Positions 3,802-32,963 of a stretch of DNA of 64,000 nucleotides are shown here, piece by piece. Location: the sequence record PQ287320.1, one strand, 5' to 3'. The notes under the pieces are model-generated. The model saw only the letters and a list, made by a program, of their open reading frames with translations. It was not told where the DNA came from and did not search any database. Numbering within the stretch: the first letter of the stretch is position 1; every line of letters begins with the position of its first letter. Both the position numbers and the translations under genes were made by a program.

Positions 3802-3806
3802 CAGAG

Positions 3807-3890: not shown

Positions 3891-3899
3891 GAGATTTGC

Positions 3900-4237: not shown

Positions 4238-4245
4238 TCGAAGGG

Positions 4246-4280
4246 ACGCCCCGGAAGATTTTCCGGGGCGTTTACTTTTT
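4246..4280 (+). terminator. Intrinsic terminator, near-copy of 3807-3840
   Basis: ACGCCCCGGAA/TTCCGGGGCGT plus TTACTTTTT. Confidence 0.75.
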
Positions 4281-4332
4281 GTTAAGACTTTGGCTGATAG
4301 TGTCCCCTGGCCGCCGGGCAATCCCGCCCGCC
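4271..4332 (+). promoter_or_regulatory. CtrA-box promoter cassette 4 with AATCCC-loop hairpin
   Basis: TTTA-N7-TTAA 4271-4285; TAGTGT 4298; loop 4320-4325. Confidence 0.7.
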
Positions 4333-4350
4333 GCTTTGGAGTTTCGGCCC

Positions 4351-4866: not shown

Positions 4867-4900
4867 GCTTTTGTTAAGACTTGGCCTCTAGGGTCAAGTC
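4863..4900 (+). promoter_or_regulatory. CtrA-box promoter cassette 5
   Basis: TTAA-GCTTTTG-TTAA 4863-4877 (contains upstream stop codon); TAGGGT 4889. Confidence 0.8.
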
Positions 4901-4954
4901 ATCGGCGCCGGGGCTGGATACCCCGGCGCGTCAACCCCGAAAGGAGTCCATACC

Positions 4955-5704
4955 GTGGCCTTTGGTCAATATTCCCATACCCCGCAAGTCCGCCGCTCCA
5001 AGCGCGACATGGTCGCCAGCCTCCCCGCCGACGTGCAAGCCGCCCTGGCTTCGGCCAAGCTCGCCGCGCGCAACACCCTGGATTACACGACGTCGGACGG
5101 GACGCGACGCGTTCGCCTGCATGACACCGACGTCCTGACCATGACCCCGGACGGCCGCGTCATGATCAACACGGGCGGCTGGAACACCCTGACCACGCGC
5201 GACCGGATCAACGGATTCGCCCCGCCTCACGTGCAGGTCTACAGCGACAAGGGACAACCGAACGTGCGCGCCGTCGCCGCTGGCGAGTCGCTGGGCTGGG
5301 ATAAGCCGGCCGCGTCGAAGGCTTTCGACAAGGCCGCGACCGTCTACCCGGACGGCCGAATCGAGGTCGACGCCAGCCCCGACCAACTGGCGATCACCCC
5401 GGCCCTGATCAAGCGCTATCTCGCCGCCTTCAAGGCCGGCTTCCCGTTCAACTCAAAGGGCGACCCGTGGATTTCGCCCGGCGCCGTCGTCGATCATGCT
5501 ACGGCCCTGGACTGGCTGGGCGCCGAGAGCGGCAAGCCCTACCTGTTCGACTCGATCCTCTATCATGCGCATATCGCGGCCGGGATTTCGGAGGTCGGCG
5601 CGCGCATGTACATGGGCGACCTCATGCGCGACCCCTCGCGCCTGGACCGCTTCCACCTCGACCGCATCCGCCGTTACTTCAAGCGCGCCTTGCGCGAAGG
5701 GTGA
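4955..5704 (+). CDS. Conserved early phage protein (LHDT..INTGGW.T.TT..RIN motif)
   Basis: AAAGGAG RBS; 249-aa ORF. Confidence 0.75.
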   Translation: MAFGQYSHTPQVRRSKRDMVASLPADVQAALASAKLAARNTLDYTTSDGTRRVRLHDTDVLTMTPDGRVMINTGGWNTLTTRDRINGFAPPHVQVYSDKGQPNVRAVAAGESLGWDKPAASKAFDKAATVYPDGRIEVDASPDQLAITPALIKRYLAAFKAGFPFNSKGDPWISPGAVVDHATALDWLGAESGKPYLFDSILYHAHIAAGISEVGARMYMGDLMRDPSRLDRFHLDRIRRYFKRALREG

Positions 5705-5709
5705 CCAGA

Positions 5710-5745
5710 GCCGGCCGCGCCTTGGAGGGCGCGGCCGGCCTTTTC
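5710..5745 (+). terminator. Intrinsic terminator
   Basis: GCCGGCCGCGCC/GGCGCGGCCGGC stem plus CTTTTC. Confidence 0.75.
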
Positions 5746-5755
5746 CGTGTACGCG

Positions 5756-5818
5756 TTTATGTTTTGTTAAGACTTTAGAGGCTAATGTCCCCTTGCCGCC
5801 GGGCAATCCCGCCCGGCC
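5756..5818 (+). promoter_or_regulatory. CtrA-box promoter cassette 6 with AATCCC-loop hairpin
   Basis: TTTA-N7-TTAA 5756-5770; TAATGT 5783; GCCGGGC-AATCCC-GCCCGGC. Confidence 0.75.
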
Positions 5819-5841
5819 GCCCGCTCAAAGGATCGTTCCCC

Positions 5842-6453
5842 ATGGCCCGTCACGCCAAAGTCACCAAGGCCGAACAAGCCGAAGCCGTCGCCAGCCTGCG
5901 CAAGCTCTTGAAGCCGGGCGACTCGGTTTACTGCATCTTGCGTCACGTCTCGTCGTCGGGAATGTTGCGGGTCATTGACCTTGCTATCCCGGTCACCGGG
6001 ACCCGGACGAACACCCTTCCGGCCGGCGCGCGCGGCTTCAAGGTCGGGGTCGAGGCCTATTACACCGAACGCGACTCGCATCGGGCGTTCTCGTCGGGCG
6101 TGGTCAAGGCTTTCGACGCCGACACCGTGACCATAGCCTATCAGGCCACCGCCGACGGCCGGGGCGTGGCGGAGGAACTGACCTTCCCGCGCGCCAAGGT
6201 GAAGTTCTACAAGCGCGAGAGCTACCCCGCCATTCGCAATATCGGCTATCTCGCCGCCCGCGCCATGGGCGACACGTGGGATAGCGACCGCCTGGGAATC
6301 AAGGTCGGCGGGTGCGGGATGGATATGGGTTTTCATCTGGTCTACAGCCTCGGCCGCACCCTCTGGCCGAACGGGACGCCCAAGCCCCATAGCACCCGCA
6401 ACGGCGAACCCGACCGCGACGGCGGTTATGCGCTGAAAAAGGAATGGCTTTAA
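5842..6453 (+). CDS. Conserved early phage protein (RHVSSSGM...GCGMDMGFHLVY motif)
   Basis: AAAGGA RBS; recognisable motif. Confidence 0.75.
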   Translation: MARHAKVTKAEQAEAVASLRKLLKPGDSVYCILRHVSSSGMLRVIDLAIPVTGTRTNTLPAGARGFKVGVEAYYTERDSHRAFSSGVVKAFDADTVTIAYQATADGRGVAEELTFPRAKVKFYKRESYPAIRNIGYLAARAMGDTWDSDRLGIKVGGCGMDMGFHLVYSLGRTLWPNGTPKPHSTRNGEPDRDGGYALKKEWL

Positions 6454-6510
6454 CCTCTTGTTAAGAGTTTAGGCCCTAGGGTCCTTGGACGGCCGGGCAA
6501 TCCCGCCCCG
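6450..6510 (+). promoter_or_regulatory. CtrA-box promoter cassette 7 with AATCCC-loop hairpin
   Basis: TTAA-CCTCTTG-TTAA 6450-6464; TAGGGT 6477. Confidence 0.8.
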
Positions 6511-6531
6511 CCGTCCAAGGATCGCTAGACC

Positions 6532-6882
6532 ATGCAAAACGTCCCCGTCGGTTTCCGCTTCGAACGCTTCGGCGCCGCCTATGTCGTTCGCCCCGGCCTG
6601 CGCTATGTCCCGGCGCAATACGCCGCCGACCCCGCCCGCCGGGGCTGGACCCTGCAAAATTCCGACCTTAAGGCCCTGCTGGGCTGGGCGCCCAAGCTTC
6701 CCCGTGAGGCCGTCGCGCCGGCCATGGTCGGCGACGTGTCGGTTTACGTCCTGAGCGCCGCCGAAGCCGCCGCCAAGCGTCCGGGCAAGGGTCGCCCGCA
6801 TCGCGTCATGGCCGTTTGCCCGGCCTGCGCCGCCCATGTCCCGGCCGGGCGCATCGGGCAACACAAATGCAAGGCGCGTTAA
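6532..6882 (+). CDS. Early protein with C-terminal C2H2-like Zn motif
   Basis: CPAC...GRIGQHKC. Confidence 0.65.
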   Translation: MQNVPVGFRFERFGAAYVVRPGLRYVPAQYAADPARRGWTLQNSDLKALLGWAPKLPREAVAPAMVGDVSVYVLSAAEAAAKRPGKGRPHRVMAVCPACAAHVPAGRIGQHKCKAR

Positions 6883-6942
6883 CCTCCTGTTAACTTCTGG
6901 CCTCTAGGGTGGCTTTGCGGGCGGGGGATCGCCCCCGCCCTT
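6879..6942 (+). promoter_or_regulatory. CtrA-box promoter cassette 8 with variant leader hairpin
   Basis: TTAA-CCTCCTG-TTAAC 6879-6894; TAGGGT 6905; GGGCGGGGG-ATCG-CCCCCGCCC. Confidence 0.8.
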
Positions 6943-6960
6943 CCATCGGAGACAGCGCCC

Positions 6961-7233
6961 ATGACCCGCGCTCAAGCCCTCGCCGAAATGAACGCCCTTC
7001 CCGGCATCCTCGCCTCTTTCGAGCGCGAGACGGGCGAATATCGCGTCACCCTGCGCTTTGGCCCGCTCCCCATGGGGCGCGGCGCCCAAGAGTGGATGCG
7101 CAACCGCCGTGAGGCCGTCGCCAGCTACAGCGACGACAAGGCCGACGCCCTGGCCACCGCCCGCGACATGTCCGCCCGCTGGGAGGCGATGAGCGCCGAA
7201 GAGCGCAACCGCCTCTATCACAACCCCGCGTAA
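6961..7233 (+). CDS. Early hypothetical protein
   Basis: GGAG RBS after cassette 8. Confidence 0.65.
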   Translation: MTRAQALAEMNALPGILASFERETGEYRVTLRFGPLPMGRGAQEWMRNRREAVASYSDDKADALATARDMSARWEAMSAEERNRLYHNPA

Positions 7234-7262
7234 CCTTTTGTTAAGACCTCGCCGCTACGGTG
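7230..7262 (+). promoter_or_regulatory. CtrA-box promoter cassette 9
   Basis: GTAA-CCTTTTG-TTAA 7230-7244; TACGGT 7256. Confidence 0.65.
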
Positions 7263-7297
7263 GCGAGGTCAAACAACCCCCGGAAGGATCGACTCCC

Positions 7298-7576
7298 ATG
7301 CGTAAGCCCCTGACCAAGGAACAAAAGGCCCGCCGCCGCCAGACGCGCCGCGCCGCCCGCCTCAACTGGTCTGATGAACGCCGCGCCCGCGAGTATGAGC
7401 GCCAGACTCGCTTTTTCCACATGATCGCCCTTCGCGCCCAAGCGGCCGGAGACAAGCGCGAGGCCATGCGCCTTGCGACCCTGGCCAGCAAGAAACACAC
7501 TTTCGCCCGTCTGGCGCAATCGTGCGCCCGCATTAACGCGCTCGCGGTTCATCCGTGGGCGTCGGTCGCCGCCTAA
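7298..7576 (+). CDS. Basic Arg-rich early protein
   Basis: GGAAGGA RBS. Confidence 0.65.
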   Translation: MRKPLTKEQKARRRQTRRAARLNWSDERRAREYERQTRFFHMIALRAQAAGDKREAMRLATLASKKHTFARLAQSCARINALAVHPWASVAA

Positions 7577-7588
7577 GGAGCCCCGCCC

Positions 7589-7879
7589 GTGACCTTCATT
7601 CCCTCCCCGCCCATGTCGCACCCTCACGCCCTGGCCGTCATCGCCCTGGCCGGGCGCGTTCTGGACCTCGCGCGCCTCCCCGGCGCCGATCAACGCGCCG
7701 CCGCGATTGATCTTGTCGGCGACCTCTACGCCCTGGCCGACTCCATCGACGTGACCGCCGGCCACCTCGTCGGCGCCGTCGGCGCGTCCCTGGACGGGAC
7801 CGCCCCGGCCGATCACCTGCGCGCCGCCCTGGACGCGTACAACCAAGCCGCCGCCCTGGCCTTGCCGGAAGCCGCCTGA
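7589..7879 (+). CDS. Early hypothetical protein
   Basis: AAGGAG RBS, GTG start. Confidence 0.6.
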   Translation: MTFIPSPPMSHPHALAVIALAGRVLDLARLPGADQRAAAIDLVGDLYALADSIDVTAGHLVGAVGASLDGTAPADHLRAALDAYNQAAALALPEAA

Positions 7880-7881
7880 CC

Positions 7882-8472
7882 ATGAACCCGAACCGCTACC
7901 GCCTCGCGCCCCGCGACCGCTTCAGCCGCGACCTAGCCGAAACCCTCTATCAGGCCGCCGAAGCCGTCGCCCGCGTGATTCCCCTCGTGCCCGAAACCGC
8001 CCCCGATGAGCGCCGCGCGCTGGGCAAGGTCCGCGCCGACCTGCTCACCCATAGCGCCGGCGCCCTCGTGCCCAAGCCGCCGGCCGCCGTGCTCGCAACC
8101 CTCGTTTGGGTTGTCGAGATGGCGCAAGATCGCGCGACCAACGCCGATTTCAACACCGCCCAAGAGGGACTCGACGAACACGAGTCCCTAGCCTTTGTCG
8201 CCGACTGGCTGGAAGCCGAAGGCCAAGACGTGACGCCGATTCGCAACGCGCAACCGTCCGCCGACGCCCTGGCCGAACTCGCCGCCCGCCGCGACGCCGA
8301 ACAAGAGGCCCTGGACGCCCTGGAAGCCGCCGCCCTGACCGAAGAGCCGGGCGACGTGATCACCGACGCCTTGCGCCCCTATCTGGGCGCCATCCTGGCC
8401 GAAACCCACTCTGACGACGTGCTGGCGGCGCTGGACCGCGCCGGCTTCGCGATCACCCGCAAGGAGGCTTAA
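7882..8472 (+). CDS. Early hypothetical protein
   Basis: 196-aa ORF, operon-packed. Confidence 0.7.
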   Translation: MNPNRYRLAPRDRFSRDLAETLYQAAEAVARVIPLVPETAPDERRALGKVRADLLTHSAGALVPKPPAAVLATLVWVVEMAQDRATNADFNTAQEGLDEHESLAFVADWLEAEGQDVTPIRNAQPSADALAELAARRDAEQEALDALEAAALTEEPGDVITDALRPYLGAILAETHSDDVLAALDRAGFAITRKEA

Positions 8473-8477
8473 AGACC

Positions 8478-8711
8478 ATGGAAGCCCGAGTCATCCCCGG
8501 CCCCGTCCCGTCCGCCCTGGATGCGGCTTGCCATGCCGTCACGTGCGGTTATGGCAAGCTGCAAAGCGCCGCCTTCCAACGCGGTGCCTCCTACGCCCGC
8601 CTAGGCCTCCCCGTCGACGACTCCGGCCGCTTCGGCGCCTATGTCCGCGCCGGCGCCACGTGGGTTGAAAACGAAACCAACCGCCGCGCCGCGCAACGGG
8701 AGGCCCGCTAG
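8478..8711 (+). CDS. Early hypothetical protein
   Basis: AAGGAGG RBS. Confidence 0.6.
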   Translation: MEARVIPGPVPSALDAACHAVTCGYGKLQSAAFQRGASYARLGLPVDDSGRFGAYVRAGATWVENETNRRAAQREAR

Positions 8712-8714
8712 ATC

Positions 8715-9056
8715 ATGACTGACCTTTCCACCGTCCCGACCGCCCTCCTTATCGCCGAACTCTACCGCCGCCCCGTGGCGCTCTGTGTGTTCGAGGGCGT
8801 CGACCTGATGGCCGAAACCGACGCGTTCGAGGACTCGACCAAGGCCGGCCAATGGCTCGCCGGAAAAGCGTCCTACGTCGCCGACGCCATGAGCGGCGCG
8901 GGCTGGGACTCGGTGCGCTATCACCTGACCGCCGACGGGCTGGGCGCCAGCGACGACGACGACGACGAGACGGGCGACGACGTGCCCGACTCGCTGTCCG
9001 GCTTCGATCCGGGCGGCGCGGGCCAAAGACTGGGCTACGTTCCCCCGCGCCGCTAA
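8715..9056 (+). CDS. Early hypothetical protein with acidic tail
   Basis: GGAGG RBS; SDDDDDETGDD tract. Confidence 0.65.
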   Translation: MTDLSTVPTALLIAELYRRPVALCVFEGVDLMAETDAFEDSTKAGQWLAGKASYVADAMSGAGWDSVRYHLTADGLGASDDDDDETGDDVPDSLSGFDPGGAGQRLGYVPPRR

Positions 9057-9237
9057 GTCATCAAATCCCCCGTCTATGACATGTCGCGGGCTGAATACTT
9101 CACCCGCGACAATCTCCCCTAGTAAAGCTCACGACTGGTTTCGTGACATAGCGCAAAGGATTGAAATTGCTCGAAAAACTCCTAGAGGCGCACAAGGTCA
9201 TTTTCTGGCTGATTCTTCTCGCTTGCCTCTGGCGCTT

Positions 9238-9300
9238 TTAACGGTTTGTTAACCCCTGGCCCACTAGGGTCTAATTCCCGGCGCGGCAATCCCGCCGCCC
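9238..9300 (+). promoter_or_regulatory. CtrA-box promoter cassette 10 with AATCCC-loop hairpin
   Basis: TTAA-CGGTTTG-TTAAC 9238-9253; TAGGGT 9265. Confidence 0.8.
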
Positions 9301-9322
9301 GGCCTTCCTTCGGAGCTAGATC

Positions 9323-9768
9323 ATGTTCGCTTCCGTGACCCTCCCCGCCCGCGACGCCCAAGGCCTGAGCCTGGACACCGTCCATGCGGTTTTCCGCCTC
9401 GAACTGGCGCAACACTTCGAACACGTGATTTCCGCCCCGTCGTCGACACCTGGACCGATGAGGCCACCGGCGCCGAGATGAGCGAAGCGGCCGTTTGCTT
9501 CACCGTTTCGGCGACCCCGGCCGCGTGGGAAGCCAAGGGCGGACGCCTCGCGCGCCGCCTGGAAAATCTCGCCGCGCGCTATGCCGCCGACTGCGACGCC
9601 CCGGCCCTGACCGTCACCCACTGCGACGGCTCGACGGTCTATGTCGGCGCCCTGGAAGCGGCCGAACGCGTCGCCCCGGTGCAAGGCCCGACCCGTGCGG
9701 CGGACCCGGCTTTCCTCCCCCGGATGCGCGAGGATAGGGCCGCCCGTTTCGAGCGCCTGACCGCCTAG
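9323..9768 (+). CDS. Early hypothetical protein (frameshifted ~9437)
   Basis: MFASVTLPARDAQ... continues into the 9478 ORF after a -1 shift. Confidence 0.55.
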
Positions 9769-9786
9769 CCCCTGGCCTGACCGCCT

Positions 9787-9819
9787 AAGCGCGCCCCCTC
9801 GCAAGGGGCGCGCTTTTCT
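9787..9819 (+). terminator. Intrinsic terminator
   Basis: AAGCGCGCCCC/GGGGCGCGCTT plus TTCT. Confidence 0.75.
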
Positions 9820-9826
9820 GCATCTG

Positions 9827-9890
9827 TTTACTTGTTGTTAAGGAATAGCCTGCTATTGTCCCCTTGTTGGCGGCGCATCCCGCGCCGCCC
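9827..9890 (+). promoter_or_regulatory. CtrA-box promoter cassette 11 with ATCCC-loop hairpin
   Basis: TTTA-N7-TTAA 9827-9841; TATTGT 9854; GGCGGCGC-ATCCC-GCGCCGCC. Confidence 0.75.
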
Positions 9891-9908
9891 CTTTCTGGAT
9901 CGCTCCCC

Positions 9909-10307
9909 ATGGCTCGCCCTTCCGACCTGCTCAACGTCAACGCCGCCCGCGTCCTGGCTTGCCTCGCCCCGATCGCCGAAGCCGCCAAGGCTTGCAGCGA
10001 AGCCGACCGCCTCGCCCTTTCCTACACCCTGCAAGCCTGCGAACTGGTCGCCTCCTGGCGTCGCAACCATACGGAAACCGACCGCCGCAAGGCCTATGGC
10101 GCCGCCGCCGCTGCTCAAGCCCTGGCCCTGGCCTCGGCCCTGCAACCGGCCACCCTGCAAGGCGGGGCCGTGCGCCGCGCTCTGGGCGCCTATGCCGCCG
10201 CCCTGCAAACCCTGCTGGACGGTAACCCCGTCATGGCCGTGCGCGCGGCCGAAGGGGCTTCGCTGTCGGTTCGGGCGCGCTACGCGAACACGCTCATCCC
10301 GGCTTAA
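9909..10307 (+). CDS. Ala-rich early protein
   Basis: ATG after cassette 11. Confidence 0.65.
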   Translation: MARPSDLLNVNAARVLACLAPIAEAAKACSEADRLALSYTLQACELVASWRRNHTETDRRKAYGAAAAAQALALASALQPATLQGGAVRRALGAYAAALQTLLDGNPVMAVRAAEGASLSVRARYANTLIPA

Positions 10308-10336
10308 CCTCTTGTTAAGACCTCCCGGCCTATAGT
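10304..10336 (+). promoter_or_regulatory. CtrA-box promoter cassette 12
   Basis: TTAA-CCTCTTG-TTAA 10304-10318; TATAGT 10331. Confidence 0.8.
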
Positions 10337-10361
10337 CGGGAGGTCACAAGGAGACACCCCC

Positions 10362-10553
10362 ATGACCCGCCCCGGCCCCGCTTCCCTCCTGACCTCGCAA
10401 GCGACGTTCTCGCCGCGTAACCTCACCCTTCCGGGCGCGCGCCCCATGCCGATCCGCGAGCCGCAAGGCTGGACCATGGGCCAATGCGTGGCCTTGGGCG
10501 TGACCCTCGGCGGCTTCGCCTTCCTCGCCCTGAAGGTCTGCGGTCTGGTCTGA
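10362..10553 (+). CDS. Small protein with C-terminal transmembrane helix
   Basis: AAGGAG RBS; hydrophobic C-terminus. Confidence 0.6.
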   Translation: MTRPGPASLLTSQATFSPRNLTLPGARPMPIREPQGWTMGQCVALGVTLGGFAFLALKVCGLV

Positions 10554-10638
10554 CCGCCCCCGGCGCCCCGGTCGGCTTGACCGGGGCGTGTCCCATATCG
10601 GGACACCCCCCGGTAGGGGGTATCTTTTTTCTTTCGGA

Positions 10639-10912
10639 GGGACCCAAAGGCCCCACCCGTTAACCATTTTTGGCGGCGCCCCCTGGCGCCTACGGATAGG
10701 TTTGAAAATTCAAGTTGACAAAACCAGCATCGCGCGTCGAGGATCACGACGTTAGCCACCGCCTCCGGCTGACGAAGCGGGCGACTGCCCCCCATCTTGT
10801 CGCCCGCCGGCCCACCTCCGCCAGATGAAGAGCCGGGGGTGGGGCCTTTTCTTTTTCCGGCCCAGGGGACCCAAGGCCCCCACCCTTTCCAAACCAAGTC
10901 GCCATGGGTCCC
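10639..10912. repeat. GGGACCC-core direct and inverted repeats in a 450-bp intergenic gap
   Basis: GGGACCCAA(A)GGCCCC(C)ACCC at 10639 and 10866; inverted GGGTCCC at 10906. Confidence 0.7.
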
Positions 10913-11004
10913 CTCGGAAAGAATCGTTTTTCATAAACCCCGGTTGACAGAACTGGAACTGGCTTCTAAGTGTTGCCCGACGACACCCAAGGAGACCCGA
11001 TCCC

Positions 11005-11241
11005 GTGAGCGACGGCTACGCCACCCGAGGCCCCGGCCACACCAAGTTCTTCGCCTCCGATGACGGCAAGCTGGTGATGCGCAGCCTGCACAACGACCCG
11101 GCCTGGACCCAGCCCGTCGCCCACGACGAAGCGCCCCTGCCGGCGTGGAAGGTCGCCTCCCTCCTGCAAGACGCCTATGACCTCGGCCGTCGCGAGCAGC
11201 AGGAGATCGTCCGCCGCGCCATCGGAGCCGCCTCGAAATGA
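11005..11241 (+). CDS. Hypothetical protein
   Basis: AAGGAG RBS; TTGACA promoter-like site upstream. Confidence 0.65.
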   Translation: MSDGYATRGPGHTKFFASDDGKLVMRSLHNDPAWTQPVAHDEAPLPAWKVASLLQDAYDLGRREQQEIVRRAIGAASK

Positions 11242-11905
11242 CCGACCTCACCTATGCCGAGCGCTATGCGCGCGAGACCCTGGCCTTGACGTTGCATGGC
11301 CAGACCCGCAGGAGCAACTCGGTCTACGAGTCCCCGCTCTGGCAGCAACTCTCCCCCGAGCAGCGCGAAGGCTGGCGCCAGGAGGCCGACAAGTTCGTCG
11401 CCGAGCAGGAGGGTGACGCCACGGCTGTCACCAAGGACCAGACGCGCAAGCTGGAGCGCTGGGAAGGCGCCCTGCTGGCCGTGGCCTTCGGGCTCGACCC
11501 GGAAGGCTACCACGACGCCAAGGACCACCGCGCCGGCCGCGACATCGCCTCCTATTTCCAGGACACGCAGCCCTACGACTACAAGCTCACCGACGAGGTG
11601 CTGCTGAACGCCTATTCCCACGCCGACGCCCTGGGCCTGGACATGCCGGCCTTTCCGACCGACGCCTTCTCGCCTCAAGCGGTCGAGAAGGTCAGCCGGC
11701 GCGTCCTGACCGACTGGGAAGCCGCCGTCATGGCCGTGTCCCAGAAGGACCACCCGCGCCTCTACGAGAACTACAAGTTCTCCGTCCCCTACGCCTTCCG
11801 CTTCACCGACGAGACCCTGGGCCTCTTCACCACCAAGATCGAACAGGGCGGCGGGCGCGACGTCCCCACCGCTCGCCGGCCGACACCAAGAGGTACCCCA
11901 TCTGA
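11238..11905 (+). CDS. Hypothetical protein (probable frameshift near the 3' end)
   Basis: A -1 shift places TGA at 11903-11905, overlapping the next ATG. Confidence 0.6.
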
Positions 11906-12201
11906 TGCGCCGCTTCTCCATCCTGACCCTCACGGCCGCCGCGATCGCCCTGGGCTGCGTCGCCACCCTCACCGCCTGCGCCGACCAGACCAAGGTGGAC
12001 GATCAGGTCTACGCCAAGCTGGACAACGGCTGCGTCGTCCACAAGATCGTCCGCCAGGAAAAGGGCAGCATGTTCACCGAGGAGGTCTTCACGACCGTCT
12101 GCCCGAACGGCGCCACCCGCACTGAATGGGAGACGACCAGGATCGTCGGCAAGCTGGTGACCACCGAAAAGCACGCCACCGAAACCCCGGCGACGCGCTG
12201 A
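11905..12201 (+). CDS. Predicted lipoprotein
   Basis: Signal peptide with lipobox LTA-C. Confidence 0.7.
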   Translation: MRRFSILTLTAAAIALGCVATLTACADQTKVDDQVYAKLDNGCVVHKIVRQEKGSMFTEEVFTTVCPNGATRTEWETTRIVGKLVTTEKHATETPATR

Positions 12202-12401
12202 TGGCCGCCCCGCTCGCCGACTACGCCGTGATCGAGACCGTCGCGATCGCGGCCTATGAGAGCAAGGTCCGCAGCGCCGGTCCGCAAAACGCCCAGCAGT
12301 GGTGCTCCTGGAAGGGGCTCCCGCCGGCCGAGCGCGGCGAGTGGCGCAACCACGCCCGCGACCTGATCCAGGAAGCCAAGGCCCAGCACGAGGGAAAATG
12401 A
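12201..12401 (+). CDS. Hypothetical protein
   Basis: TGATG overlap; MAAPLADYAVIET... Confidence 0.6.
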   Translation: MAAPLADYAVIETVAIAAYESKVRSAGPQNAQQWCSWKGLPPAERGEWRNHARDLIQEAKAQHEGK

Positions 12402-13420
12402 TGAACCGCCGCACCTTCTTCCGTTCCGTCGCCGCCCTGGCGCTGACTGCCGCCTCGGGTCTGCCAGCCTCGGCCAAGCCCTATCCGTCGCCGGTGATCT
12501 CGCGCACCCTGATCGAGCAGGCCGAGCAGGTCTTGCGTGAAGGCGCCCCTGAGTCCGTCATTCGCTCGGCGGTGATGGAGCAATTCGCCTTCCCGGACAT
12601 CACCAATGCGCTGGAGTTCGTTGACGTTGGGGCCGACAACTGGGTTCCTGGCGACGGCAAGCGCCTGCGGATCATGGGCGGCGACATCGACGTCGCCCAG
12701 AGCTTGATCAAGACCTACGGCCCGAACGTCATCCAGCACCAGCGCCGGATGAAGCTGAAGTCGCTGTCGCTCTATTTCGCCGACGTCATCGTCAACGGGA
12801 ACAACGAAGAGGACCCCCGCGAGTTCGACGGCATCCGTCGCCGCGCCCAGATCGTGCGGATCAACGCCAAGAAGGACCTCGATTTCGACAGCCTCGACGC
12901 CCTGATCCGCGACATCCCCGGCGCCAACGCCTTGCTGATGAGCAAGCGCATGCGCAACATCATGACGCGGCGCGCGCCGAACGCGGGCCGGCAGGCGATT
13001 TGGCTGCGGGATCGCTTCGGGGGTCGTCGCGCCACCTACAGCCCCAAGGGCAGCAAGGCGGGTCTCTCGATCCTGGTCACCGACTACAGCGACAAGAACG
13101 TCCAGGTCATCGACTTCAACGAGGGCATGGGCGGCGCGAGGGGCGGCGACTACACCTCGATCTACGTCCTGCGCCTGGGGACGGACGGGTTGCACGCGCG
13201 CCAGAACGCCATGCTGGAGGTCAGCGAGACCCAGGACATCAGCTACGTCTACGACCGCGACAACGCGCGCATGGTCCTGGTCAGCCACCAGCGTCCGGTC
13301 TTCCAGACCCTGGACGTGAATCGCCTGCGGGTCGAATGGCTCGTCACCCTGGAGACCGACACCCGCGCCGGCCCGGCGATCGGCCGGCTGACGGGCATCG
13401 CCAAGCCGAGTATCGCCTGA
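12398..13420 (+). CDS. Major capsid protein paralog with N-terminal twin-arginine signal peptide
   Basis: Blocks RLRIMGGDIDV, DPREFDGIRRR, MSKRMRN, ILVTDYSDKNVQVIDFNE and RVEWLV match 32028-32963; N-terminus NRRTFFRSVAALALTAASGLPASA. Confidence 0.85.
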   Translation: MMNRRTFFRSVAALALTAASGLPASAKPYPSPVISRTLIEQAEQVLREGAPESVIRSAVMEQFAFPDITNALEFVDVGADNWVPGDGKRLRIMGGDIDVAQSLIKTYGPNVIQHQRRMKLKSLSLYFADVIVNGNNEEDPREFDGIRRRAQIVRINAKKDLDFDSLDALIRDIPGANALLMSKRMRNIMTRRAPNAGRQAIWLRDRFGGRRATYSPKGSKAGLSILVTDYSDKNVQVIDFNEGMGGARGGDYTSIYVLRLGTDGLHARQNAMLEVSETQDISYVYDRDNARMVLVSHQRPVFQTLDVNRLRVEWLVTLETDTRAGPAIGRLTGIAKPSIA

Positions 13421-13986
13421 TGAACGCCTCCCTCATCTTCAATCGTGCCTTCACGGTCGCCGATCTCGTCTCCGCCATGCGGGTGCTCCCCTCGGTTGGC
13501 GGCATCCTGGCCGACGCCCGTGCCTTCAATCACGCTGCTTCGATCGGCGTCAAGACGGGCACGGCCAGCTTCGAGACCAACGTCATGGGCCTGAAGGTCC
13601 TGATCTTCAATCGCCAGCCGATGTGGATCGAAACGGCCCTGAAGGTCGAGCCGCGCGATGACGTCCCCGAGGTCGAGGAGGTCCTGCGCTTCCTGGTCCT
13701 CGGCCGCGCCGTCCATGATGAGTTCATCGCCCGTCGGGCCGAGGCCTGGGCGTGGCGTGAGCAATACGATGCCCCGCTCGACGACGCCAACGCCTTCCTG
13801 GCGGTCAAGGGTCAGTTCGAGGCCGACTTTCCCGAGCGGCGCTTCGGCGGAACGCATGGTCTGAACGTCAAGGGCGTCGCCGACCTCGTCTCGAACGACA
13901 CCGTCCTGGACGTCAAGTTCCTCATCCCCAAATCCGGTCCGGACGACTTCGCCGGCCTCGCGGCCCAGACCTTCAACGAGCGGTAG
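13420..13986 (+). CDS. Hypothetical protein
   Basis: TGATG overlap; 188 aa. Confidence 0.65.
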   Translation: MNASLIFNRAFTVADLVSAMRVLPSVGGILADARAFNHAASIGVKTGTASFETNVMGLKVLIFNRQPMWIETALKVEPRDDVPEVEEVLRFLVLGRAVHDEFIARRAEAWAWREQYDAPLDDANAFLAVKGQFEADFPERRFGGTHGLNVKGVADLVSNDTVLDVKFLIPKSGPDDFAGLAAQTFNER

Positions 13987-13987
13987 C

Positions 13988-14354
13988 ATGAGCGTCAACT
14001 ACTACGTCGAGCGTTACGGCCGCGTCAGCGGAGCCCGGACCAAGATCACCCACATCGGCCAGTGGGCGAATGGACGCTTCCTGTTCAGCGGGAGCCAGCA
14101 CCGCACCACCCGCGACTGGCGCGACGCCCTTCGCGCCCTCACCGCTGACGAAAAGATCGTCAGCGAGAACGGCGTGGTCATGACCCGCGCGAATTCTGGA
14201 ACATGGTCGGCGAGACCCTGGCCAACGACACCACTCTCGACTACGCCCTGAACGTCGCCGAGGGCTTCGAGCAGTACAGCCTCGCGCGCGGCTTCCTGGA
14301 GGGCCGCTATTGGATGGACGGCCCTTCGCCTTCACCTCTGGAGAGTTCCACTGA
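13988..14354 (+). CDS. Hypothetical protein (two probable frameshifts)
   Basis: MSVNYYVERY... to REFWNMVGET... to GPFAFTSGEFH* after two -1 shifts; stop overlaps next ATG. Confidence 0.5.
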
Positions 14355-14641
14355 TGCCCCTCTACCGCAAGAAGCCCGTCGTGATCGAGGCGATCACCTT
14401 CGAGGACCTCGTCCAGCACGGGATCGAAGCCGGCGCCAACATCGTCAACGGCATGCCCTGGTCGTTCCAGTACAAGGGCCAGCCGATCACCCACGAGAAC
14501 GACGACACCTACCTCATCCCGACCCTGGAAGGCACCATGTTCTTCCGGCGCGGCGACATGCTCATCACGGGCGTGAAGGGTGAAATCTACCCGTGCGAGC
14601 GGGCCATTTTCGAGGCGACCTATGAGCAAGTCGAGTCCTAG
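14354..14641 (+). CDS. Conserved small phage protein (YRKKPVVIEA..TLEG.M...GD..I.GVKGE.YPC family)
   Basis: Recognisable motif. Confidence 0.8.
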   Translation: MPLYRKKPVVIEAITFEDLVQHGIEAGANIVNGMPWSFQYKGQPITHENDDTYLIPTLEGTMFFRRGDMLITGVKGEIYPCERAIFEATYEQVES

Positions 14642-14891
14642 CAAGTCGGAATTGATGGCGGTCGGCGAGCGCAAGCACGAGACCTGCCGCTACGGCCGGC
14701 TGACCGAGGTCTGGACGACCGACTGCGCCACGGGCAAGGAGACCGCCGGCGTCGGCCCGCTCTGCACCTTCGAGCCGGCCGGCGATCTCCCGCCGGCCCT
14801 CAAGCGGGTGTGGGGCGGCTTGATCGACTACGATCGCGACTGCGCCGTCTGCCTCGCCCATCGCGAGGTCCCGCTGGAGCCCCTCCCATGA
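14622..14891 (+). CDS. Small Cys-containing hypothetical protein
   Basis: C..C motifs; operon-packed. Confidence 0.55.
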   Translation: MSKSSPSKSELMAVGERKHETCRYGRLTEVWTTDCATGKETAGVGPLCTFEPAGDLPPALKRVWGGLIDYDRDCAVCLAHREVPLEPLP

Positions 14892-15178
14892 GCACCTGGG
14901 ACAACCGCGTCTTCTGCCCGTGCGGCCACAATGACGACCACTATGGCGGCGATCCGGCCCTGGCCGGCTTCTGGTACAAGAACGACGTCTGCCCCCGCTG
15001 CGCGACGACCGGTGGTCATTGGCGCGTCTTCACCGTCCGCTGGGTCTCCAAGGCCGTCTGGTGGGCACCGTGGACCTGGGGCAAGGGCTATTGGGAGTGC
15101 CAGACCGCGCAGGAGCGCAAGCCCCTGACCGAGGTCTGGCCCGTGCTCGCCGACAAGGAGCCTGTCCATGACGATTGA
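14888..15178 (+). CDS. Small Zn-ribbon-like protein
   Basis: CPCG...CPRC. Confidence 0.6.
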   Translation: MSTWDNRVFCPCGHNDDHYGGDPALAGFWYKNDVCPRCATTGGHWRVFTVRWVSKAVWWAPWTWGKGYWECQTAQERKPLTEVWPVLADKEPVHDD

Positions 15179-15572
15179 ACCGACCGCCCCTCACCTCTCC
15201 GTCTACAACCCCGACGCCGTCGTGGTCAACGTGGTGACCTATGAGCGCCATCCGCTGTTCCGCATCCGCAAGGTGATGAACTATTCCGGCGGCCGGCCCT
15301 ACACCGACCACTACGCCGTCCAGCGCCGGCTCCCGCTCCCGTGGGTCGATCTCTACCTCACGGTGACGATCTGGACGGTGAACAAGGACGAGACCCGGAT
15401 CACGCGTCGCCCGGCCCGGCTGGGGGACCGCAAGACGGCCGAGGAGATCGTCGCCACCAAGCCGGCCTTCTTCCCGCGCCGCCCCAAGTCCTGGCGCCCC
15501 AGGCCCGACCCGTCGCCCAATCCGGACGTCGCCCATTTCAACGCCGAAGGCAAGGTAGTCACCCGTGGCTGA
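15168..15572 (+). CDS. Hypothetical protein
   Basis: AAGGAG RBS. Confidence 0.6.
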   Translation: MTIEPTAPHLSVYNPDAVVVNVVTYERHPLFRIRKVMNYSGGRPYTDHYAVQRRLPLPWVDLYLTVTIWTVNKDETRITRRPARLGDRKTAEEIVATKPAFFPRRPKSWRPRPDPSPNPDVAHFNAEGKVVTRG

Positions 15573-19452: not shown

Positions 19453-20196
19453 CTACTCCTTGAGGAAGCCGGCGGCGATCGCCTCGGCCTTGGTGTTGGA
19501 CTTCCTCAGGATCGAGTAGCCCCGGTACTGCTTGTAGGTGACGCCCTCGTAAAGCTGGACCTCCAGCTTGCCGTCGAGCGCGATCCGCCCCAGGCGCACG
19601 GGCGAGGCCACGAACGGCGCCGGCTCCCCGCCCTTCCAGACGTTGACCTCGACCTCGCCGCGATCGGCCGTCGCCACCACCAGCGAGGCATGGCCCCGAT
19701 CCAGTTCGGGTTCCAGATTTCCAGCCACATGGTGTCGCCGCCGGCTCCCGCGTCCGCCAGTCGCCGCGCCAGGGTCAGGGCGTAGTCCTCGCAGTCGCCG
19801 CAGAAGGCGTTTTCGGCCCAAAAATCGCTGTTTTGGTAGTTCGTTTGGTCGGAAGTGTACTGAAAATTCGCCCGAAGCGCGGAATCTTGCCCTTCGACCT
19901 CCGAAAACGTCAATTTTCGACCACTTTTGGACTTGCAGAGGGGATTTTCGGCCCATTTTGAGCAAAAATCGCGCAGATCGGGGATCGAAACGGCCACTTC
20001 GCCCCATAGACGACCTTTTCCTCGCCCGAGGCGCTGGATTTGGGATCGGCGGGCATTTGTGGTCGACGGCGGCCGGCGCGGTGACGATCGGGACGTCCTG
20101 GGCCGGGGCGACGAGGGAATGGGCGCTCCAGGCGAACCAGCCGAGGCCGCCGAGCAGGATCGTCGCGATCGCGACAAGGACAAGCCAGAAACGCAT
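19453..20196 (-). CDS. Membrane-anchored transglutaminase-like cysteine protease (BTLCP/LapG family), split by three -1 frameshifts
   Basis: N-terminal hydrophobic anchor MRFWLVLVAIATILLGG; catalytic CGDCEDYAL and HASLVV motifs in successive frames. Confidence 0.75.
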   Translation of the reverse strand: MRFWLVLVAIATILLGGLGWFAWSAHSLVAPAQDVPIVTAPAAVDHKCPPIPNPAPRARKRSSMGRSGRFDPRSARFLLKMGRKSPLQVQKWSKIDVFGGRRARFRASGEFSVHFRPNELPKQRFLGRKRLLRRLRGLRPDPGAATGGRGSRRRHHVAGNLEPELDRGHASLVVATADRGEVEVNVWKGGEPAPFVASPVRLGRIALDGKLEVQLYEGVTYKQYRGYSILRKSNTKAEAIAAGFLKE

Positions 20197-20485
20197 GGTC
20201 GACACCCTGAGTGTCGTTAACCATGACACGAGATGTCGTGATGCGCAACATTCGCGCATAAGAAGAGCCCCGCCGTCGTGATTCCAGCGGGGCTCCGGTT
20301 CCATTGGGTTTTGACATATGAGGTTCGGCCGCCTCGGGCGACCGAACAGGTTCCGCTACTTCATATGGGTCTCCTTCCTTGGTCTGTCATTTCCAGGGGC
20401 CTCACGAGGCCCTTTGTGAAGGCCCGAAGCTAGACCGGCCCAAATCGGCCGTCAAGAGGAAAACGTGGTGAATCACGACCTGAAT

Positions 20486-32027: not shown

Positions 32028-32963
32028 ATGGCTGCTGTGACCCTGCTGCAAGCGTCCGAAATGGCGCTCGGCAACGACGAAGTCAAGCGCGCCGCGATCA
32101 TCGAGCTTTTCGCGACGCCCGACATCCTGCGCGTGATTCCGTTCCTGGACATCCAGGGCGGCGCGTACACCTACCTGCAAGAAGGCCAGCTTTCGGGCGT
32201 CGCCTTCCGGGGCATCAACGAGTCCTATGACACGTCGACCGGCGTGATCAACCCGCAAGTCGAGCGCCTGCGCATCGTCGGCGGCGACCTGGACGTCGAC
32301 AAGGCCCTGCTGAAGACCCACGGCGCCAACGTTCGCTCGCAGCAGGAGCGCATGAAGGTCAAGGCCCTGAGCCTGTACCTCGCCGGCAAGATCATCAACG
32401 GCGACTCGGAAGCCGATCCGCGTGAGTTCGACGGTCTGCGCAAGCGCATCACCGGTTCGCAACTCTTCCCGGCCGGCAACACCGCTGGCGGTGACGCCCT
32501 GTCGCTGGCCGTCCTGGACGAAGCCATCGACGCCGTCGACGGCGCGAACTACCTGATCATGTCGAAGCGCATGCGTAACCTGCTCGCGCAGTCGGCCAAC
32601 AACCCCAACGTCACCGGCTACGTGACCTGGGACAAGGACGAGTTCGGCATGCGCATCATGCGCTACGCTGACCTGCCGATCCTGGTCACCGACTACGACG
32701 ACAAGAACCAGCAGGTCATCGACTTCAACGAAGCCTGCCCCGGCGGCGGCTCGGCGGTCGGTACCTCGATCTACGTCGTCAACATCGGCGACGAAGGCGT
32801 GGTCGGTCTCCAGAACGGCGTCATGGAAATCGACGACCTGGGCGAGATCGACGCCAAGCCGGTTCTGCGCACCCGCGTCGAATGGCTGGTCTCGCTGGCC
32901 GTCCTGAGCGGCCGTTCCGCCGCTCGCGTCTGGGGCATCAAGAAGGCCGCCGTCACCCGCTAA
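32028..32963 (+). CDS. Major capsid protein (HK97 fold)
   Basis: GGDLDVD, EFDGL.KR and TSIY motifs; strong GAGGAG RBS; highly biased codons; position after scaffold. Confidence 0.9.
   Translation: MAAVTLLQASEMALGNDEVKRAAIIELFATPDILRVIPFLDIQGGAYTYLQEGQLSGVAFRGINESYDTSTGVINPQVERLRIVGGDLDVDKALLKTHGANVRSQQERMKVKALSLYLAGKIINGDSEADPREFDGLRKRITGSQLFPAGNTAGGDALSLAVLDEAIDAVDGANYLIMSKRMRNLLAQSANNPNVTGYVTWDKDEFGMRIMRYADLPILVTDYDDKNQQVIDFNEACPGGGSAVGTSIYVVNIGDEGVVGLQNGVMEIDDLGEIDAKPVLRTRVEWLVSLAVLSGRSAARVWGIKKAAVTR

What the first reader, a model, noticed from the sequence alone, without database searches (positions are those of the whole stretch)
12398..13420. Second major-capsid gene rebuilt as a Tat-exported protein lacking the E-loop
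Seen: this ORF shares long blocks with the true MCP at 32028-32963 (RLRIMGGDIDV vs RLRIVGGDLDV; DPREFDGIRRR vs DPREFDGLRKR; MSKRMRN; ILVTDYSDKNVQVIDFNE vs ILVTDYDDKNQQVIDFNE; RVEWLV). It differs in three ways: (i) a new N-terminus MMNRRTFFRSVAALALTAASGLPASA, with a twin-arginine motif, hydrophobic helix and A-x-A cleavage site; (ii) the 37-aa MCP segment between FLDI and RLRI is replaced by 11 aa; (iii) a ~21-aa insertion before RVEW. It sits among accessory genes, 19 kb from the capsid operon. Established: Tat exports folded proteins to the periplasm, and the HK97-fold E-loop makes key inter-subunit shell contacts. Inference: the deleted segment is the E-loop, giving a capsid-fold protein that cannot build normal shells and is sent to the periplasm. 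Possible roles are superinfection exclusion, a decoy for capsid-recognising host factors, or a repurposed oligomer. I do not know of a described equivalent.
Basis: partly seen in the sequence, partly recalled or inferred. Interest (0 to 1): 0.9.

Follow-up and report, generated by a model that had tools for sequence, protein, structure and literature searches.

The report
Exported capsid-protein paralogue in Caulobacter phage
Caulobacter phage BL57 carries, 19 kb from its head genes, a diverged copy of its capsid protein that has an export signal and lacks the loop that links capsid subunits; it belongs to a small, undescribed family of such copies in related giant phages, and its role is unknown.

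Summary
The window is Caulobacter phage BL57 (PQ287320.1). ORF 12398-13420 (BL57_025, annotated "hypothetical") is 38% identical (E 1e-59) to the true major capsid protein (MCP) at 32028-32963. It starts with MMNRRTFFRSVAALALTAASGLPASA, a textbook twin-arginine (Tat) signal. The 37-aa MCP segment is replaced by 11 aa, and AlphaFold models place that segment in the E-loop hairpin. A C-terminal hairpin is enlarged from 12 to 33 aa.

It is not a recent duplicate of BL57's own MCP. It lies in a ~1.3-kb insertion that no other deposited phage has. It belongs to an undescribed family of at least 13 diverged MCP paralogues with RR signals, found in accessory-gene arrays of phiCbK-like phage contigs. 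One member is CcrColossus gp36, noted in 2012 only as a translocated MCP duplicate. In 139 canonical MCPs the two segment lengths are fixed (37 and 12 aa in 138/139). In the paralogues they drift freely.

Best reading: a Tat-exported, non-shell-forming HK97-fold accessory protein acting in the cell envelope. Export is predicted, not shown, and the periplasmic function is unknown. Superinfection exclusion is only a guess.

The parts
12390..12395 (+). Shine-Dalgarno-like GAGGGA, 2-5 nt upstream of the tandem ATGs
   Evidence: Read directly from the sequence.
12398..13420 (+). CDS of the MCP paralogue (BL57_025; 340 aa from the first ATG, 339 aa as annotated from 12401). Its start overlaps the stop of BL57_024 (ATGA). 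Its stop overlaps the start of BL57_026 (TGATG).
   Evidence: GC3 is 0.93 over the body of the gene.
12398..12475 (+). Predicted Tat signal peptide, aa 1-26 (MMNRRTFFRSVAALALTAASGLPASA)
   Evidence: Sequence; positions. PF10518 TAT_signal matches aa 1-19 at E 0.36, below threshold. The motif is shared by 12 homologues.
12404..12421 (+). Twin-arginine motif N-R-R-T-F-F (aa 3-8)
   Evidence: R4 and R5 are invariant or nearly invariant in the family alignment A2.
12467..12475 (+). A-S-A (aa 24-26), the predicted signal peptidase I site; mature protein starts KPYPSP
   Evidence: Sequence. Cleavage is inferred, not shown.
12629..12661 (+). 11-aa remnant (GADNWVPGDGK, aa 78-88) replacing the 37-aa E-loop segment of the MCP
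   Evidence: AlphaFold secondary structures.
13223..13321 (+). Enlarged C-terminal beta-hairpin segment (aa 276-308; 33 aa against 12 aa in canonical MCPs), just before RLRVEWLV
   Evidence: In the model it forms strands 274-286, 291-294 and 305-313, with pLDDT 64-75.
12210..13499 (+). BL57-specific insertion (~1.3 kb) carrying BL57_024, BL57_025 and the first ~80 nt of BL57_026. It replaces 68 bp of phage Ccr10.
   Evidence: blastn of window 10500-15500 against Ccr10; megablast coverage gaps in all relatives.
12201..12401 (+). BL57_024 (66 aa), co-inserted and translationally coupled upstream gene. It weakly resembles the N-terminus of BL57_023 (phrog_12122).
32028..32963 (+). True major capsid protein (BL57_068), 98% identical to phiCbK MCP gp68; the reference for comparison
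   Evidence: phiCbK gp68 was found in virions by proteomics (Gill 2012).
32154..32264 (+). E-loop segment of the true MCP (aa 43-79), absent from the paralogue
   Evidence: AlphaFold: strands 46-51 and 75-80 with a disordered tip at 54-72. Its length is 37 aa in 138 of 139 canonical MCPs.

Best explanation
BL57_025 is an accessory (moron-like) gene. It encodes a capsid-fold (HK97-type) protein that has left capsid building and is sent to the cell envelope.

Proposed steps:
1. It is translated from ATG 12398/12401, coupled to the small gene upstream (shown by sequence).
2. The precursor folds in the cytoplasm, and the host TatABC system recognises its N-R-R-T-F-F motif (inferred).
3. It is exported folded, and signal peptidase I cuts after A-S-A26. 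This leaves a ~35-kDa basic periplasmic protein (inferred).
4. The E-loop hairpin, which lies over neighbouring subunits in capsids, is gone, and a second hairpin is enlarged. The protein therefore probably cannot join or form a closed shell and acts as a monomer or small oligomer (inferred from models and length statistics).
5. Its periplasmic job is unknown. My best guess is an envelope-level function in phage competition or host takeover, such as superinfection exclusion. The hypervariable former contact loops would then be free to evolve as binding surfaces.

The same design recurs in at least 13 diverged genes of phiCbK-like phage contigs. It is therefore a maintained function, not an accident.
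For: **Homology and fold**
- BLASTP E 1e-59 and PHROG 212.
- AlphaFold pLDDT 86, pTM 0.82.
- Foldseek top hits are encapsulins and phage capsids, prob 1.00.

**Signal**
- RR motif, an h-region rich in A/L/T/S/G (best 12-aa Kyte-Doolittle window 1.9) and A-S-A.
- The start lies upstream of the RR motif, with an SD and a stop/start overlap.
- Coding-type GC3.
- The crude Tat rule is nearly unique to this ORF in the window.

**Family**
- Twelve further MCP-like proteins carry MNRRxF-type signals although their sequences have diverged to 26-45% identity.
- Pfam TAT_signal hits 7 of 13 members (best E 4e-4). TIGR01409 hits 4 of 13 (best E 3e-4).

**Independent hint of envelope targeting**
- In CcrColossus the paralogue gp36 lies directly downstream, on the same strand, of gp37. 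gp37 is a BTLCP/Peptidase_C93 protein with a lipoprotein-type signal.
- In BL57 the insertion lies directly after a lipoprotein gene.

**Release from shell constraints**
- The E-loop segment is 37 aa in 138/139 canonical MCPs, but 10-21 aa in 9 of 14 paralogues.
- The hairpin segment is 12 aa in 138/139 canonical MCPs, but 19-40 aa in 7 of 14 paralogues.
- BL57_025 keeps only 45 of 83 positions that are at least 90% conserved in canonical MCPs.
- In BPP-1 capsids the E-loops overlie neighbouring MCPs at local threefolds (PMC3863775).

**Not decaying**
- The ORF is intact, the model is confident, core residues are conserved, and all family members are intact ORFs in phage gene arrays.
Against: - No dedicated predictor (SignalP/TatP) was available.
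- BL57's own signal is below the curated HMM cut-offs.
- Export, cleavage and oligomeric state are untested.
- The closest relative (P0088, starred sister in the tree) has no signal peptide. The core function may therefore not require export.
- Five Tat-bearing members keep a full-length E-loop segment, so E-loop loss is not obligatory for the family.
- No conserved partner gene was found.
- There was no hit to defence or anti-defence models.
- Every metagenomic family member is a singleton cluster or nearly so, and none was found among the best IMG/VR, GTDB or JGI loci. The family is rare.
- The periplasmic role is a guess with no direct evidence.
Confidence: 0.6

Rival explanations
1. The protein works in the cytoplasm, for example as a dominant-negative or decoy capsid subunit aimed at co-infecting relatives or at host sensors of capsid protein. 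The N-terminal RR/hydrophobic stretch would then be a membrane tether or irrelevant.
For: The sister protein P0088 has the same E-loop loss and hairpin insertion but no signal peptide. Tat substrates fold in the cytoplasm before export (established knowledge). BL57's own signal is below the HMM threshold.
Against: Thirteen of 14 family members carry an RR signal with an A-x-A-type end, despite 26-45% identity elsewhere. R4 and R5 are invariant or nearly so. Such conservation of signal features is hard to explain without export. P0227 fuses a Tat signal directly to the A-domain part.
Confidence: 0.15
2. After export the protein assembles into periplasmic capsomer-like rings or sheets, or it carries a signal-less partner through Tat as a hitchhiker. 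In this reading it is a periplasmic nanostructure or carrier rather than a lone binder.
For: HK97-fold proteins self-assemble. The best structural matches are family 2 encapsulins. Five family members keep a full E-loop segment. BL57_024 is co-inserted and translationally coupled. Tat can export oligomers and hitchhikers (established knowledge).
Against: BL57_025 itself lacks the E-loop and has an altered hairpin. No conserved neighbouring partner or cargo-like gene occurs across loci. No multimer modelling was possible.
Confidence: 0.12
3. It is a decaying or neutral remnant of a capsid gene duplication, with a chance signal-like N-terminus.
For: Branches are long and many canonical positions are lost. 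Only one isolate carries the gene. It is rare in databases.
Against: The 340-aa ORF is intact with GC3 0.93 and a confident fold. The fold core is conserved (G95, D96, D98, G134, G145, R149, Y214, R309, R311, E313, W314, R330 are invariant in the family). It is translationally coupled on both sides. The architecture recurs in more than 12 independent intact genes.
Confidence: 0.04
4. It is a minor virion component, such as a specialised vertex or cap subunit of the prolate head, analogous to T4 gp24.
For: It is an MCP paralogue in a prolate-headed phage. Old work reported a 33-kDa putative vertex protein in phiCbK (cited in Gill 2012).
Against: That 33-kDa band was identified as processed gp68 itself. 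phiCbK and all other Shapirovirus-like genomes lack this gene yet build the same heads. The gene lies outside the structural module. An export signal and the lack of an E-loop do not fit cytoplasmic shell incorporation.
Confidence: 0.03

Closest known systems
CcrColossus gp36 (YP_006988270.1, annotated 'major head protein'), noted by Gill et al. 2012 as a diverged MCP duplicate translocated ~21 kb upstream of the MCP gene
   Same: An MCP paralogue in a phiCbK-like Caulobacter phage, about 20 kb upstream of the real MCP. It has an N-terminal RR signal (MQRRNFFKSLLGLFVAVPALNVATQAAA).
   Different: Only 26% identical to BL57_025. It keeps a full 37-aa E-loop segment and a 12-aa hairpin. It lies on the opposite strand in a two-gene unit with a BTLCP lipoprotein. 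The signal peptide was not mentioned in the paper.
Canonical phiCbK-type major capsid protein (phiCbK gp68 / BL57_068; Pfam PF20911 GP7, NCBIfam NF045672, PHROG 212)
   Same: Same fold and clear sequence homology: N-arm, spine helix, A-domain and the motifs LRIxGGDxDV, DPRxFDG, MSKxMRN, VIDFNE and RxEWL.
   Different: The paralogue has a signal peptide. Its E-loop segment is 11 aa instead of 37, and its hairpin segment is 33 aa instead of 12. It keeps 45/83 invariant positions. It is basic (pI ~9.3 against 4.85). It lies outside the structural module and scores below the Pfam and NCBIfam cut-offs.
Encapsulins (HK97-fold shells of cells; family 2, and the truncated A-domain-only 'family 4')
   Same: HK97-fold proteins recruited to non-virion roles. 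Family 2 encapsulins are the top Foldseek PDB hits. A-domain-only derivatives also exist in this phage family (P0227; the L003 147-aa gene).
   Different: Encapsulins are cellular and cytoplasmic, form closed shells and have cargo genes. Here the gene is phage-borne, carries an export signal, lacks the E-loop and has no cargo-like neighbour. The description of family 4 comes from my own knowledge and was not checked here.
Capsid-protein paralogues used as vertex proteins (T4 gp24 relative to gp23)
   Same: A diverged duplicate of the MCP kept in the same genome.
   Different: gp24-type proteins are cytoplasmic virion components encoded in the head module (own knowledge). BL57_025 has an export signal and is absent from sister phages that make the same heads.
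Periplasmic or envelope superinfection-exclusion proteins of phages (e.g. T4 Sp/Imm, T5 Llp, lipoprotein Ltp)
   Same: Small accessory, non-structural genes whose products are sent to the envelope of the infected cell. Their occurrence among close relatives is patchy (own knowledge for the comparators; for BL57).
   Different: None of those is a capsid-fold protein or, to my knowledge, a Tat substrate. No exclusion phenotype has been tested here.
Bacterial Tat substrates
   Same: Z-R-R-x-phi-phi motif, a weakly hydrophobic h-region and an A-x-A cleavage site.
   Different: Typical Tat substrates are cofactor-bearing redox enzymes or oligomers (own knowledge). A viral capsid-fold passenger has not been described in the papers searched.

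Membership tests
HK97-fold major capsid protein, epsilon15 gp7-like branch (PF20911 / NF045672 / PHROG 212) | Significant sequence match to the family models | tested here: inconclusive
   PHROG 212 E 5e-24 and BLASTP E 1e-59 to the resident MCP. However, Pfam GP7 gives 14.9 bits against a cut-off of 27, and NF045672 gives 65.8 bits against a cut-off of 75.
HK97-fold major capsid protein, epsilon15 gp7-like branch (PF20911 / NF045672 / PHROG 212) | HK97 fold (N-arm, spine helix, P- and A-domains) | tested here: met
   AlphaFold pLDDT 86, pTM 0.82. Foldseek prob 1.00 to encapsulins and phage capsids.
HK97-fold major capsid protein, epsilon15 gp7-like branch (PF20911 / NF045672 / PHROG 212) | Extended E-loop hairpin of fixed length | tested here: not met
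   11 aa instead of 37, whereas 138/139 canonical members have 37. The hairpin strands are absent from the model.
HK97-fold major capsid protein, epsilon15 gp7-like branch (PF20911 / NF045672 / PHROG 212) | Encoded in the head module and present in virions | tested here: not met
   It lies 18.6 kb upstream among accessory genes, in a BL57-specific insertion. Virion content cannot be tested with these tools.
Tat (twin-arginine) export substrates | N-terminal S/T-R-R-x-F-L-K-like motif, moderately hydrophobic h-region, A-x-A c-region | tested here: met
   N-R-R-T-F-F-R; SVAALALTAASGL (Kyte-Doolittle 1.9); A-S-A. Nearly unique in the window.
Tat (twin-arginine) export substrates | Score above the curated cut-off of the Tat-signal HMMs (PF10518, TIGR01409) | tested here: not met
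   BL57_025 scores 11.3 bits on PF10518 against a cut-off of 22.7, E 0.36, and has no TIGR01409 hit. At family level, 7/13 and 4/13 members hit, with best E 4e-4 and 3e-4. These short models often miss true signals.
Tat (twin-arginine) export substrates | TatC- and RR-dependent export of the folded protein | not testable with these tools
   Needs fractionation or reporter fusions in wild-type against tat-deficient cells, and an RR>KK mutant.
Encapsulins | Cellular gene with an adjacent cargo protein bearing a targeting peptide; forms closed shells | tested here: not met
   The gene is phage-borne. The neighbours are small proteins of unknown function with no cargo-type domains. No signal-bearing copies were found in GTDB genome representatives. 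Shell formation cannot be tested here.
Phage superinfection-exclusion / envelope accessory proteins | Envelope-targeted product of a non-essential accessory gene with patchy distribution | tested here: met
   Predicted signal. The gene is absent from all 23 related phage records that match the flanks.
Phage superinfection-exclusion / envelope accessory proteins | Blocks infection by the same or related phages when expressed | not testable with these tools
   Requires plating and adsorption-injection assays in Caulobacter CB15/NA1000.

The most novel reading that the evidence does not exclude
phiCbK-like giant phages maintain a family of capsid-fold (HK97) proteins that are exported folded through the host Tat pathway and work in the periplasm. 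These would be the first exported capsid-fold proteins. Their former shell-contact loops (the E-loop and a C-terminal hairpin) would be freed to diversify as binding surfaces, for superinfection exclusion, envelope remodelling or periplasmic assemblies.
Probability: 0.5. Interest if true: 0.8.

Novelty: new variant of a known kind. Interest (0 to 1): 0.68.

Why it matters
The HK97 fold is the universal building block of tailed-phage, herpesvirus and encapsulin shells. All known uses are cytoplasmic and shell-forming.

A maintained family in which this fold carries a Tat signal would be a new kind of exaptation of a capsid protein. In this family the two segments that are length-invariant in 138/139 real capsid proteins shrink or grow freely. 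That gives a natural experiment on which parts of the fold serve assembly and which serve folding.

It would also give a new class of phage-encoded envelope proteins in a well-developed model host, Caulobacter crescentus. The system is easy to test: one gene, a non-pathogenic host, and sister phages that naturally lack the gene.

It also corrects annotations. Colossus gp36 is labelled 'major head protein', and BL57_025 is labelled 'hypothetical'.

Tried and rejected
1. **Recent in-genome duplication: rejected.** BL57_025 is about equally distant (34-38%) from all phiCbK-like MCPs, and it sits in an insertion.
2. **Close relatives for dN/dS: none found.**
   - The nearest protein is 40-45% identical across 5.8 billion and 1.84 billion protein sets.
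   - A single-protein scan of JGI metagenomes found nothing.
   - The best 80 IMG/VR loci, 9 GTDB loci and 80 metagenome loci were all canonical MCPs without signals.
   - One genome scan with the 13-sequence alignment failed for lack of a conserved stretch.
3. **Solved structure of a close homologue: none.** phmmer found no hit. A profile search found only 8cjz and BPP-1 3j4u, matching the N-terminal element. The E-loop assignment therefore rests on AlphaFold topology, not on superposition. Model coordinates are not readable in the scripts.
4. **Conserved partner gene: none.** An all-against-all comparison of neighbours in 9 loci found none beyond synteny between two related contigs.
5. **Defence or anti-defence models (PADLOC): no hits**.
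6. **Foreign composition of the insert: none.** GC is 0.64-0.69, like the flanks.
7. **Promoter scan: no sigma-70-like sites.** The only terminator-like site is at 10605-10621.
8. **Expression timing of the flanking genes.** The phiCbK RNA-seq table (PMC10688885) is stored truncated, before the phage sheets.
9. **Literature.** Searches for Tat, signal peptide and capsid paralogues found nothing beyond Gill 2012.
10. **Second tblastn 'places' in CcrPW, Kabachok and Papperlapapp** were not resolved.
Full report
**Identity of the window and the observation.** The region is 100% identical, at the same coordinates, to Caulobacter phage BL57 (PQ287320.1, host C. vibrioides CB15), a phiCbK-like giant siphophage. 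ORF 12398-13420 (+) is intact and is annotated BL57_025 'hypothetical protein', starting at the second ATG, 12401. Both proteins hit PHROG 212 'major head protein', at E 5e-24 and 8e-86. The 32028 gene is 98% identical to phiCbK MCP gp68, which was found in virions by proteomics (Gill et al. 2012, PMC3556154). The N-terminus reads MMNRRTFFRSVAALALTAASGLPASA. The 37 aa between FLDI and RLRI are replaced by 11 aa. There is a 21-aa net insertion before RVEW.

**Start site and coding status.** The sequence GAGGGAAAATGATGAAC places a GAGG 4 or 7 nt before two tandem ATGs. The first ATG overlaps the TGA of the upstream gene, BL57_024. The stop of 025 overlaps the ATG of BL57_026 (TGATG). Third-position GC is 0.85 in the signal codons and 0.93 in the rest, matching neighbouring genes and the MCP. 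A start downstream of the RR motif is therefore unlikely. A crude Tat rule applied to all 1465 start/ORF combinations of the window passes only this ORF and one spurious antisense ORF. No stop codon interrupts the ORF, so nothing had to be read through.

**Where the gene came from.** Among 50,697 phage records, tblastn finds this protein only in BL57. Every other hit is a canonical MCP at 29-38% identity. A blastn comparison with Ccr10 shows that BL57 12210-13499 replaces 68 bp of the relative. BL57_024 and 025 are therefore a ~1.3-kb insertion, placed directly after a lipoprotein gene (phiCbK gp024 'putative lipoprotein'). The GC content of the insert matches the flanks. The gene is thus not a recent duplicate of BL57's own MCP.

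**A family, not a one-off.** Exhaustive HMMER searches found a set of MCP-like proteins with N-terminal extensions. The 13 clusters are P0002, P0048, P0055, P0087, P0089, P0090, P0092, P0102, P0109, P0113, P0125, P0154 and the shorter P0227.
- Twelve begin with RR signals such as MNRRNFL..., MNRRDLIK..., MHRRDLLK..., MNRREVFK..., MNRRFFLK..., MNRRSFLL..., followed by an Ala/Gly/Thr-rich stretch and an A-x-A-type end. P0055 has KR instead of RR.
- R4 and R5 are invariant or nearly invariant in the alignment.
- Pfam TAT_signal hits 7 of 13 members (best E 4e-4). TIGR01409 hits 4 of 13 (best E 3e-4). BL57's own score is sub-threshold, at 11.3 bits against a cut-off of 22.7.
- P0113 is CcrColossus gp36. 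Gill et al. described Colossus gene 36 as a significantly diverged MCP duplicate translocated ~21 kb upstream of the MCP gene. Their text does not mention a signal peptide, and RefSeq labels the gene 'major head protein'.
- The other members are metagenomic singletons. They lie in long one-directional arrays of small genes without Pfam hits, typical of accessory regions of large phages.
- None was found in bacterial genome representatives.

**Structure.** AlphaFold with a 149-sequence alignment gives confident models for both proteins: paralogue pLDDT 86.2 and pTM 0.82, MCP pLDDT 86.0 and pTM 0.81. In the MCP, three N-terminal helices are followed by a hairpin of strands 46-51 and 75-80 with a disordered tip (54-72). 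Then come a strand, a short helix and the long spine helix (101-124). This is the position and shape of the E-loop. The family profile aligns this N-terminal element to the N-element of BPP-1 MCP (3j4u) and to 8cjz. In BPP-1 the N-element holds the E-loop and spine helix, and the E-loops lie over neighbouring MCPs at local threefolds to form the non-covalent chainmail (PMC3863775). In the paralogue the hairpin strands are absent. Residues 77-94 run almost directly into the strand before the spine helix (110-133). The C-terminal insertion lengthens a beta-hairpin (strands 274-286, 291-294 and 305-313; pLDDT 64-75). I infer, without superposition, that this is the distal P-domain hairpin. Foldseek places the model among encapsulins (family 2 first) and phage capsids. 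Residues 1-30 have low confidence, as expected for a signal peptide.

**Release from shell constraints (my own measurement).**
- In 139 canonical MCPs of this family, the E-loop segment is 37 aa in 138, and the C-terminal hairpin segment is 12 aa in 138.
- In the 14 paralogues, the E-loop segment is 10-21 aa in nine (BL57: 11) and 35-37 aa in five.
- The hairpin segment is 19-40 aa in seven (BL57: 33).
- BL57_025 keeps 45 of the 83 positions that are at least 90% conserved in canonical MCPs. Eleven are lost with the E-loop and 27 are substituted.
- The fold core stays invariant in the family.
- The mature protein would be ~35 kDa with pI ~9.3, against pI 4.85 for the MCP. Charge varies across the family.

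**Phylogeny.** In an IQ-TREE analysis of 51 proteins, BL57_025 falls in a starred clade of six, with P0088 (sister, 97/86), P0002, P0089, P0087 and P0125. All six have reduced E-loops. Twelve Tat-bearing paralogues plus the phiCbK-like MCPs form one starred group of 22. P0154 sits elsewhere. The Tat label needs at least three changes on the tree. The paralogues thus derive from the phiCbK-like MCP lineage and evolve fast. Whether the signal was gained once is unresolved. P0088 has no signal peptide, and no remnant lies upstream. Its locus shares genes with BL57, including a BL57_027 homologue directly downstream.

**Context clues.** In CcrColossus, gp36 follows gp37 on the same (minority) strand. 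gp37 is a BTLCP/Peptidase_C93 protein (PF06035, E 2e-7) that begins MRILAGLLACLALLSC, a lipoprotein-type signal. So two envelope-directed products appear to be co-transcribed. No conserved partner occurs across the other loci. PADLOC models give nothing.

**Mechanism and confidence.**
- Shown: homology, fold, intact coding, start site, insertion, family, and the length statistics.
- Inferred: Tat recognition, cleavage after ASA26, periplasmic residence, and inability to form shells.
- Guessed: an envelope-level role such as superinfection exclusion.

I put 0.6 on 'Tat-exported, non-shell-forming capsid-fold accessory protein'. The specific role deserves much less. The rivals are set out in their own section: cytoplasmic action, periplasmic assembly or carrier, decay, and minor virion protein.

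**Novelty.** MCP paralogues and non-viral uses of the HK97 fold are known, and Colossus gene 36 was noted as a duplicate. A family of capsid-fold proteins carrying Tat signals, with eroding E-loops, was not found in the literature searched. I rate it a new variant of a known kind, with interest 0.68.

Noticed in passing
window 11905-12201 (+): An unannotated ORF (98 aa, MRRFSILTLTAAAIALGCVATLTAC...) is homologous in position to phiCbK gp024 'putative lipoprotein'. Its GC3 is 0.94. The annotated BL57_023 (11238-12125) runs over it in another frame, and that tail has GC3 0.46. BL57_023 is therefore probably over-extended: its phrog_12122 match ends at aa 212 of 295.
   Followed up: partly
window 19453-20304 (-): BL57's homologue of the CcrColossus gp37 BTLCP peptidase (Peptidase_C93) is split between two reading frames at about 19707-19710 and is annotated only as small fragments (BL57_042c/043c). 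This could be a frameshift, a pseudogene or a sequencing error.
   Followed up: partly
L007 (CcrColossus NC_019406) 5286-6966: gp37 (a BTLCP peptidase with a lipoprotein-type signal) and gp36 (the Tat-signal MCP paralogue) form a two-gene unit on the minority strand, divergent from the portal gene and followed by an annotated terminator.
   Followed up: partly
L012 6001-6966 (protein P0088): The closest relative of BL57_025 has the same E-loop loss (an acidic 10-aa remnant, EPPEEDEPPR) and a 31-aa hairpin insertion, but no signal peptide. It is followed by a homologue of BL57_027.
   Followed up: partly
L003 9398-9841; proteins P0227/P0294: Further MCP-derived fragments occur. One is a 147-aa gene encoding only the C-terminal/A-domain half of an MCP, 2 kb downstream of the Tat-bearing paralogue in L003 (BL57's MCP also hits phrog_31318, an unknown-function family, over aa 160-305). 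The other is a 214-aa protein with a Tat signal fused directly to the A-domain part, followed by an unrelated C-terminus.
   Followed up: partly
window 32028-32963 against PDB 8cjz: In the profile-to-8cjz alignment, profile positions 237-304 match chain 171-249, and positions 173-219 match chain 281-330. The order of the two later elements is therefore swapped. This hints that phiCbK-like MCPs have the HK97 topology while their detectable relative has the permuted BPP-1 topology. The evidence is weak (domain i-Evalues 2.7 and 3.2e+03).
   Followed up: no
window 12201-12401 (+): BL57_024 (66 aa), co-inserted with the paralogue, weakly resembles the N-terminus of BL57_023 (phrog_12122, E 0.004). 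Two 023-like genes lie upstream in L012. This suggests the insert came by recombination from a related phage.
   Followed up: no
window 10605-10621 (+): A strong terminator-like hairpin (ACCCCCCGGTAGGGGGT followed by a T run) lies near the place where the terminal repeat ends in Ccr10 (repeat annotated 1-10650). The gene array containing the paralogue starts just downstream, at about 11005.
   Followed up: no
L004 10462-11280 (-): The phage-like contig carrying the paralogue P0055 also encodes a CsgG-family protein (PF03783, curli-type outer-membrane lipoprotein channel). This is another envelope-directed accessory gene.
   Followed up: no
L009 and L013: Two metagenomic contigs carrying the paralogues P0089 and P0087 are syntenic over about 10 kb (a DUF6794 gene two genes upstream, a DUF4326 gene downstream). 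Within that phage lineage the paralogue is therefore inherited vertically at a fixed position.
   Followed up: partly
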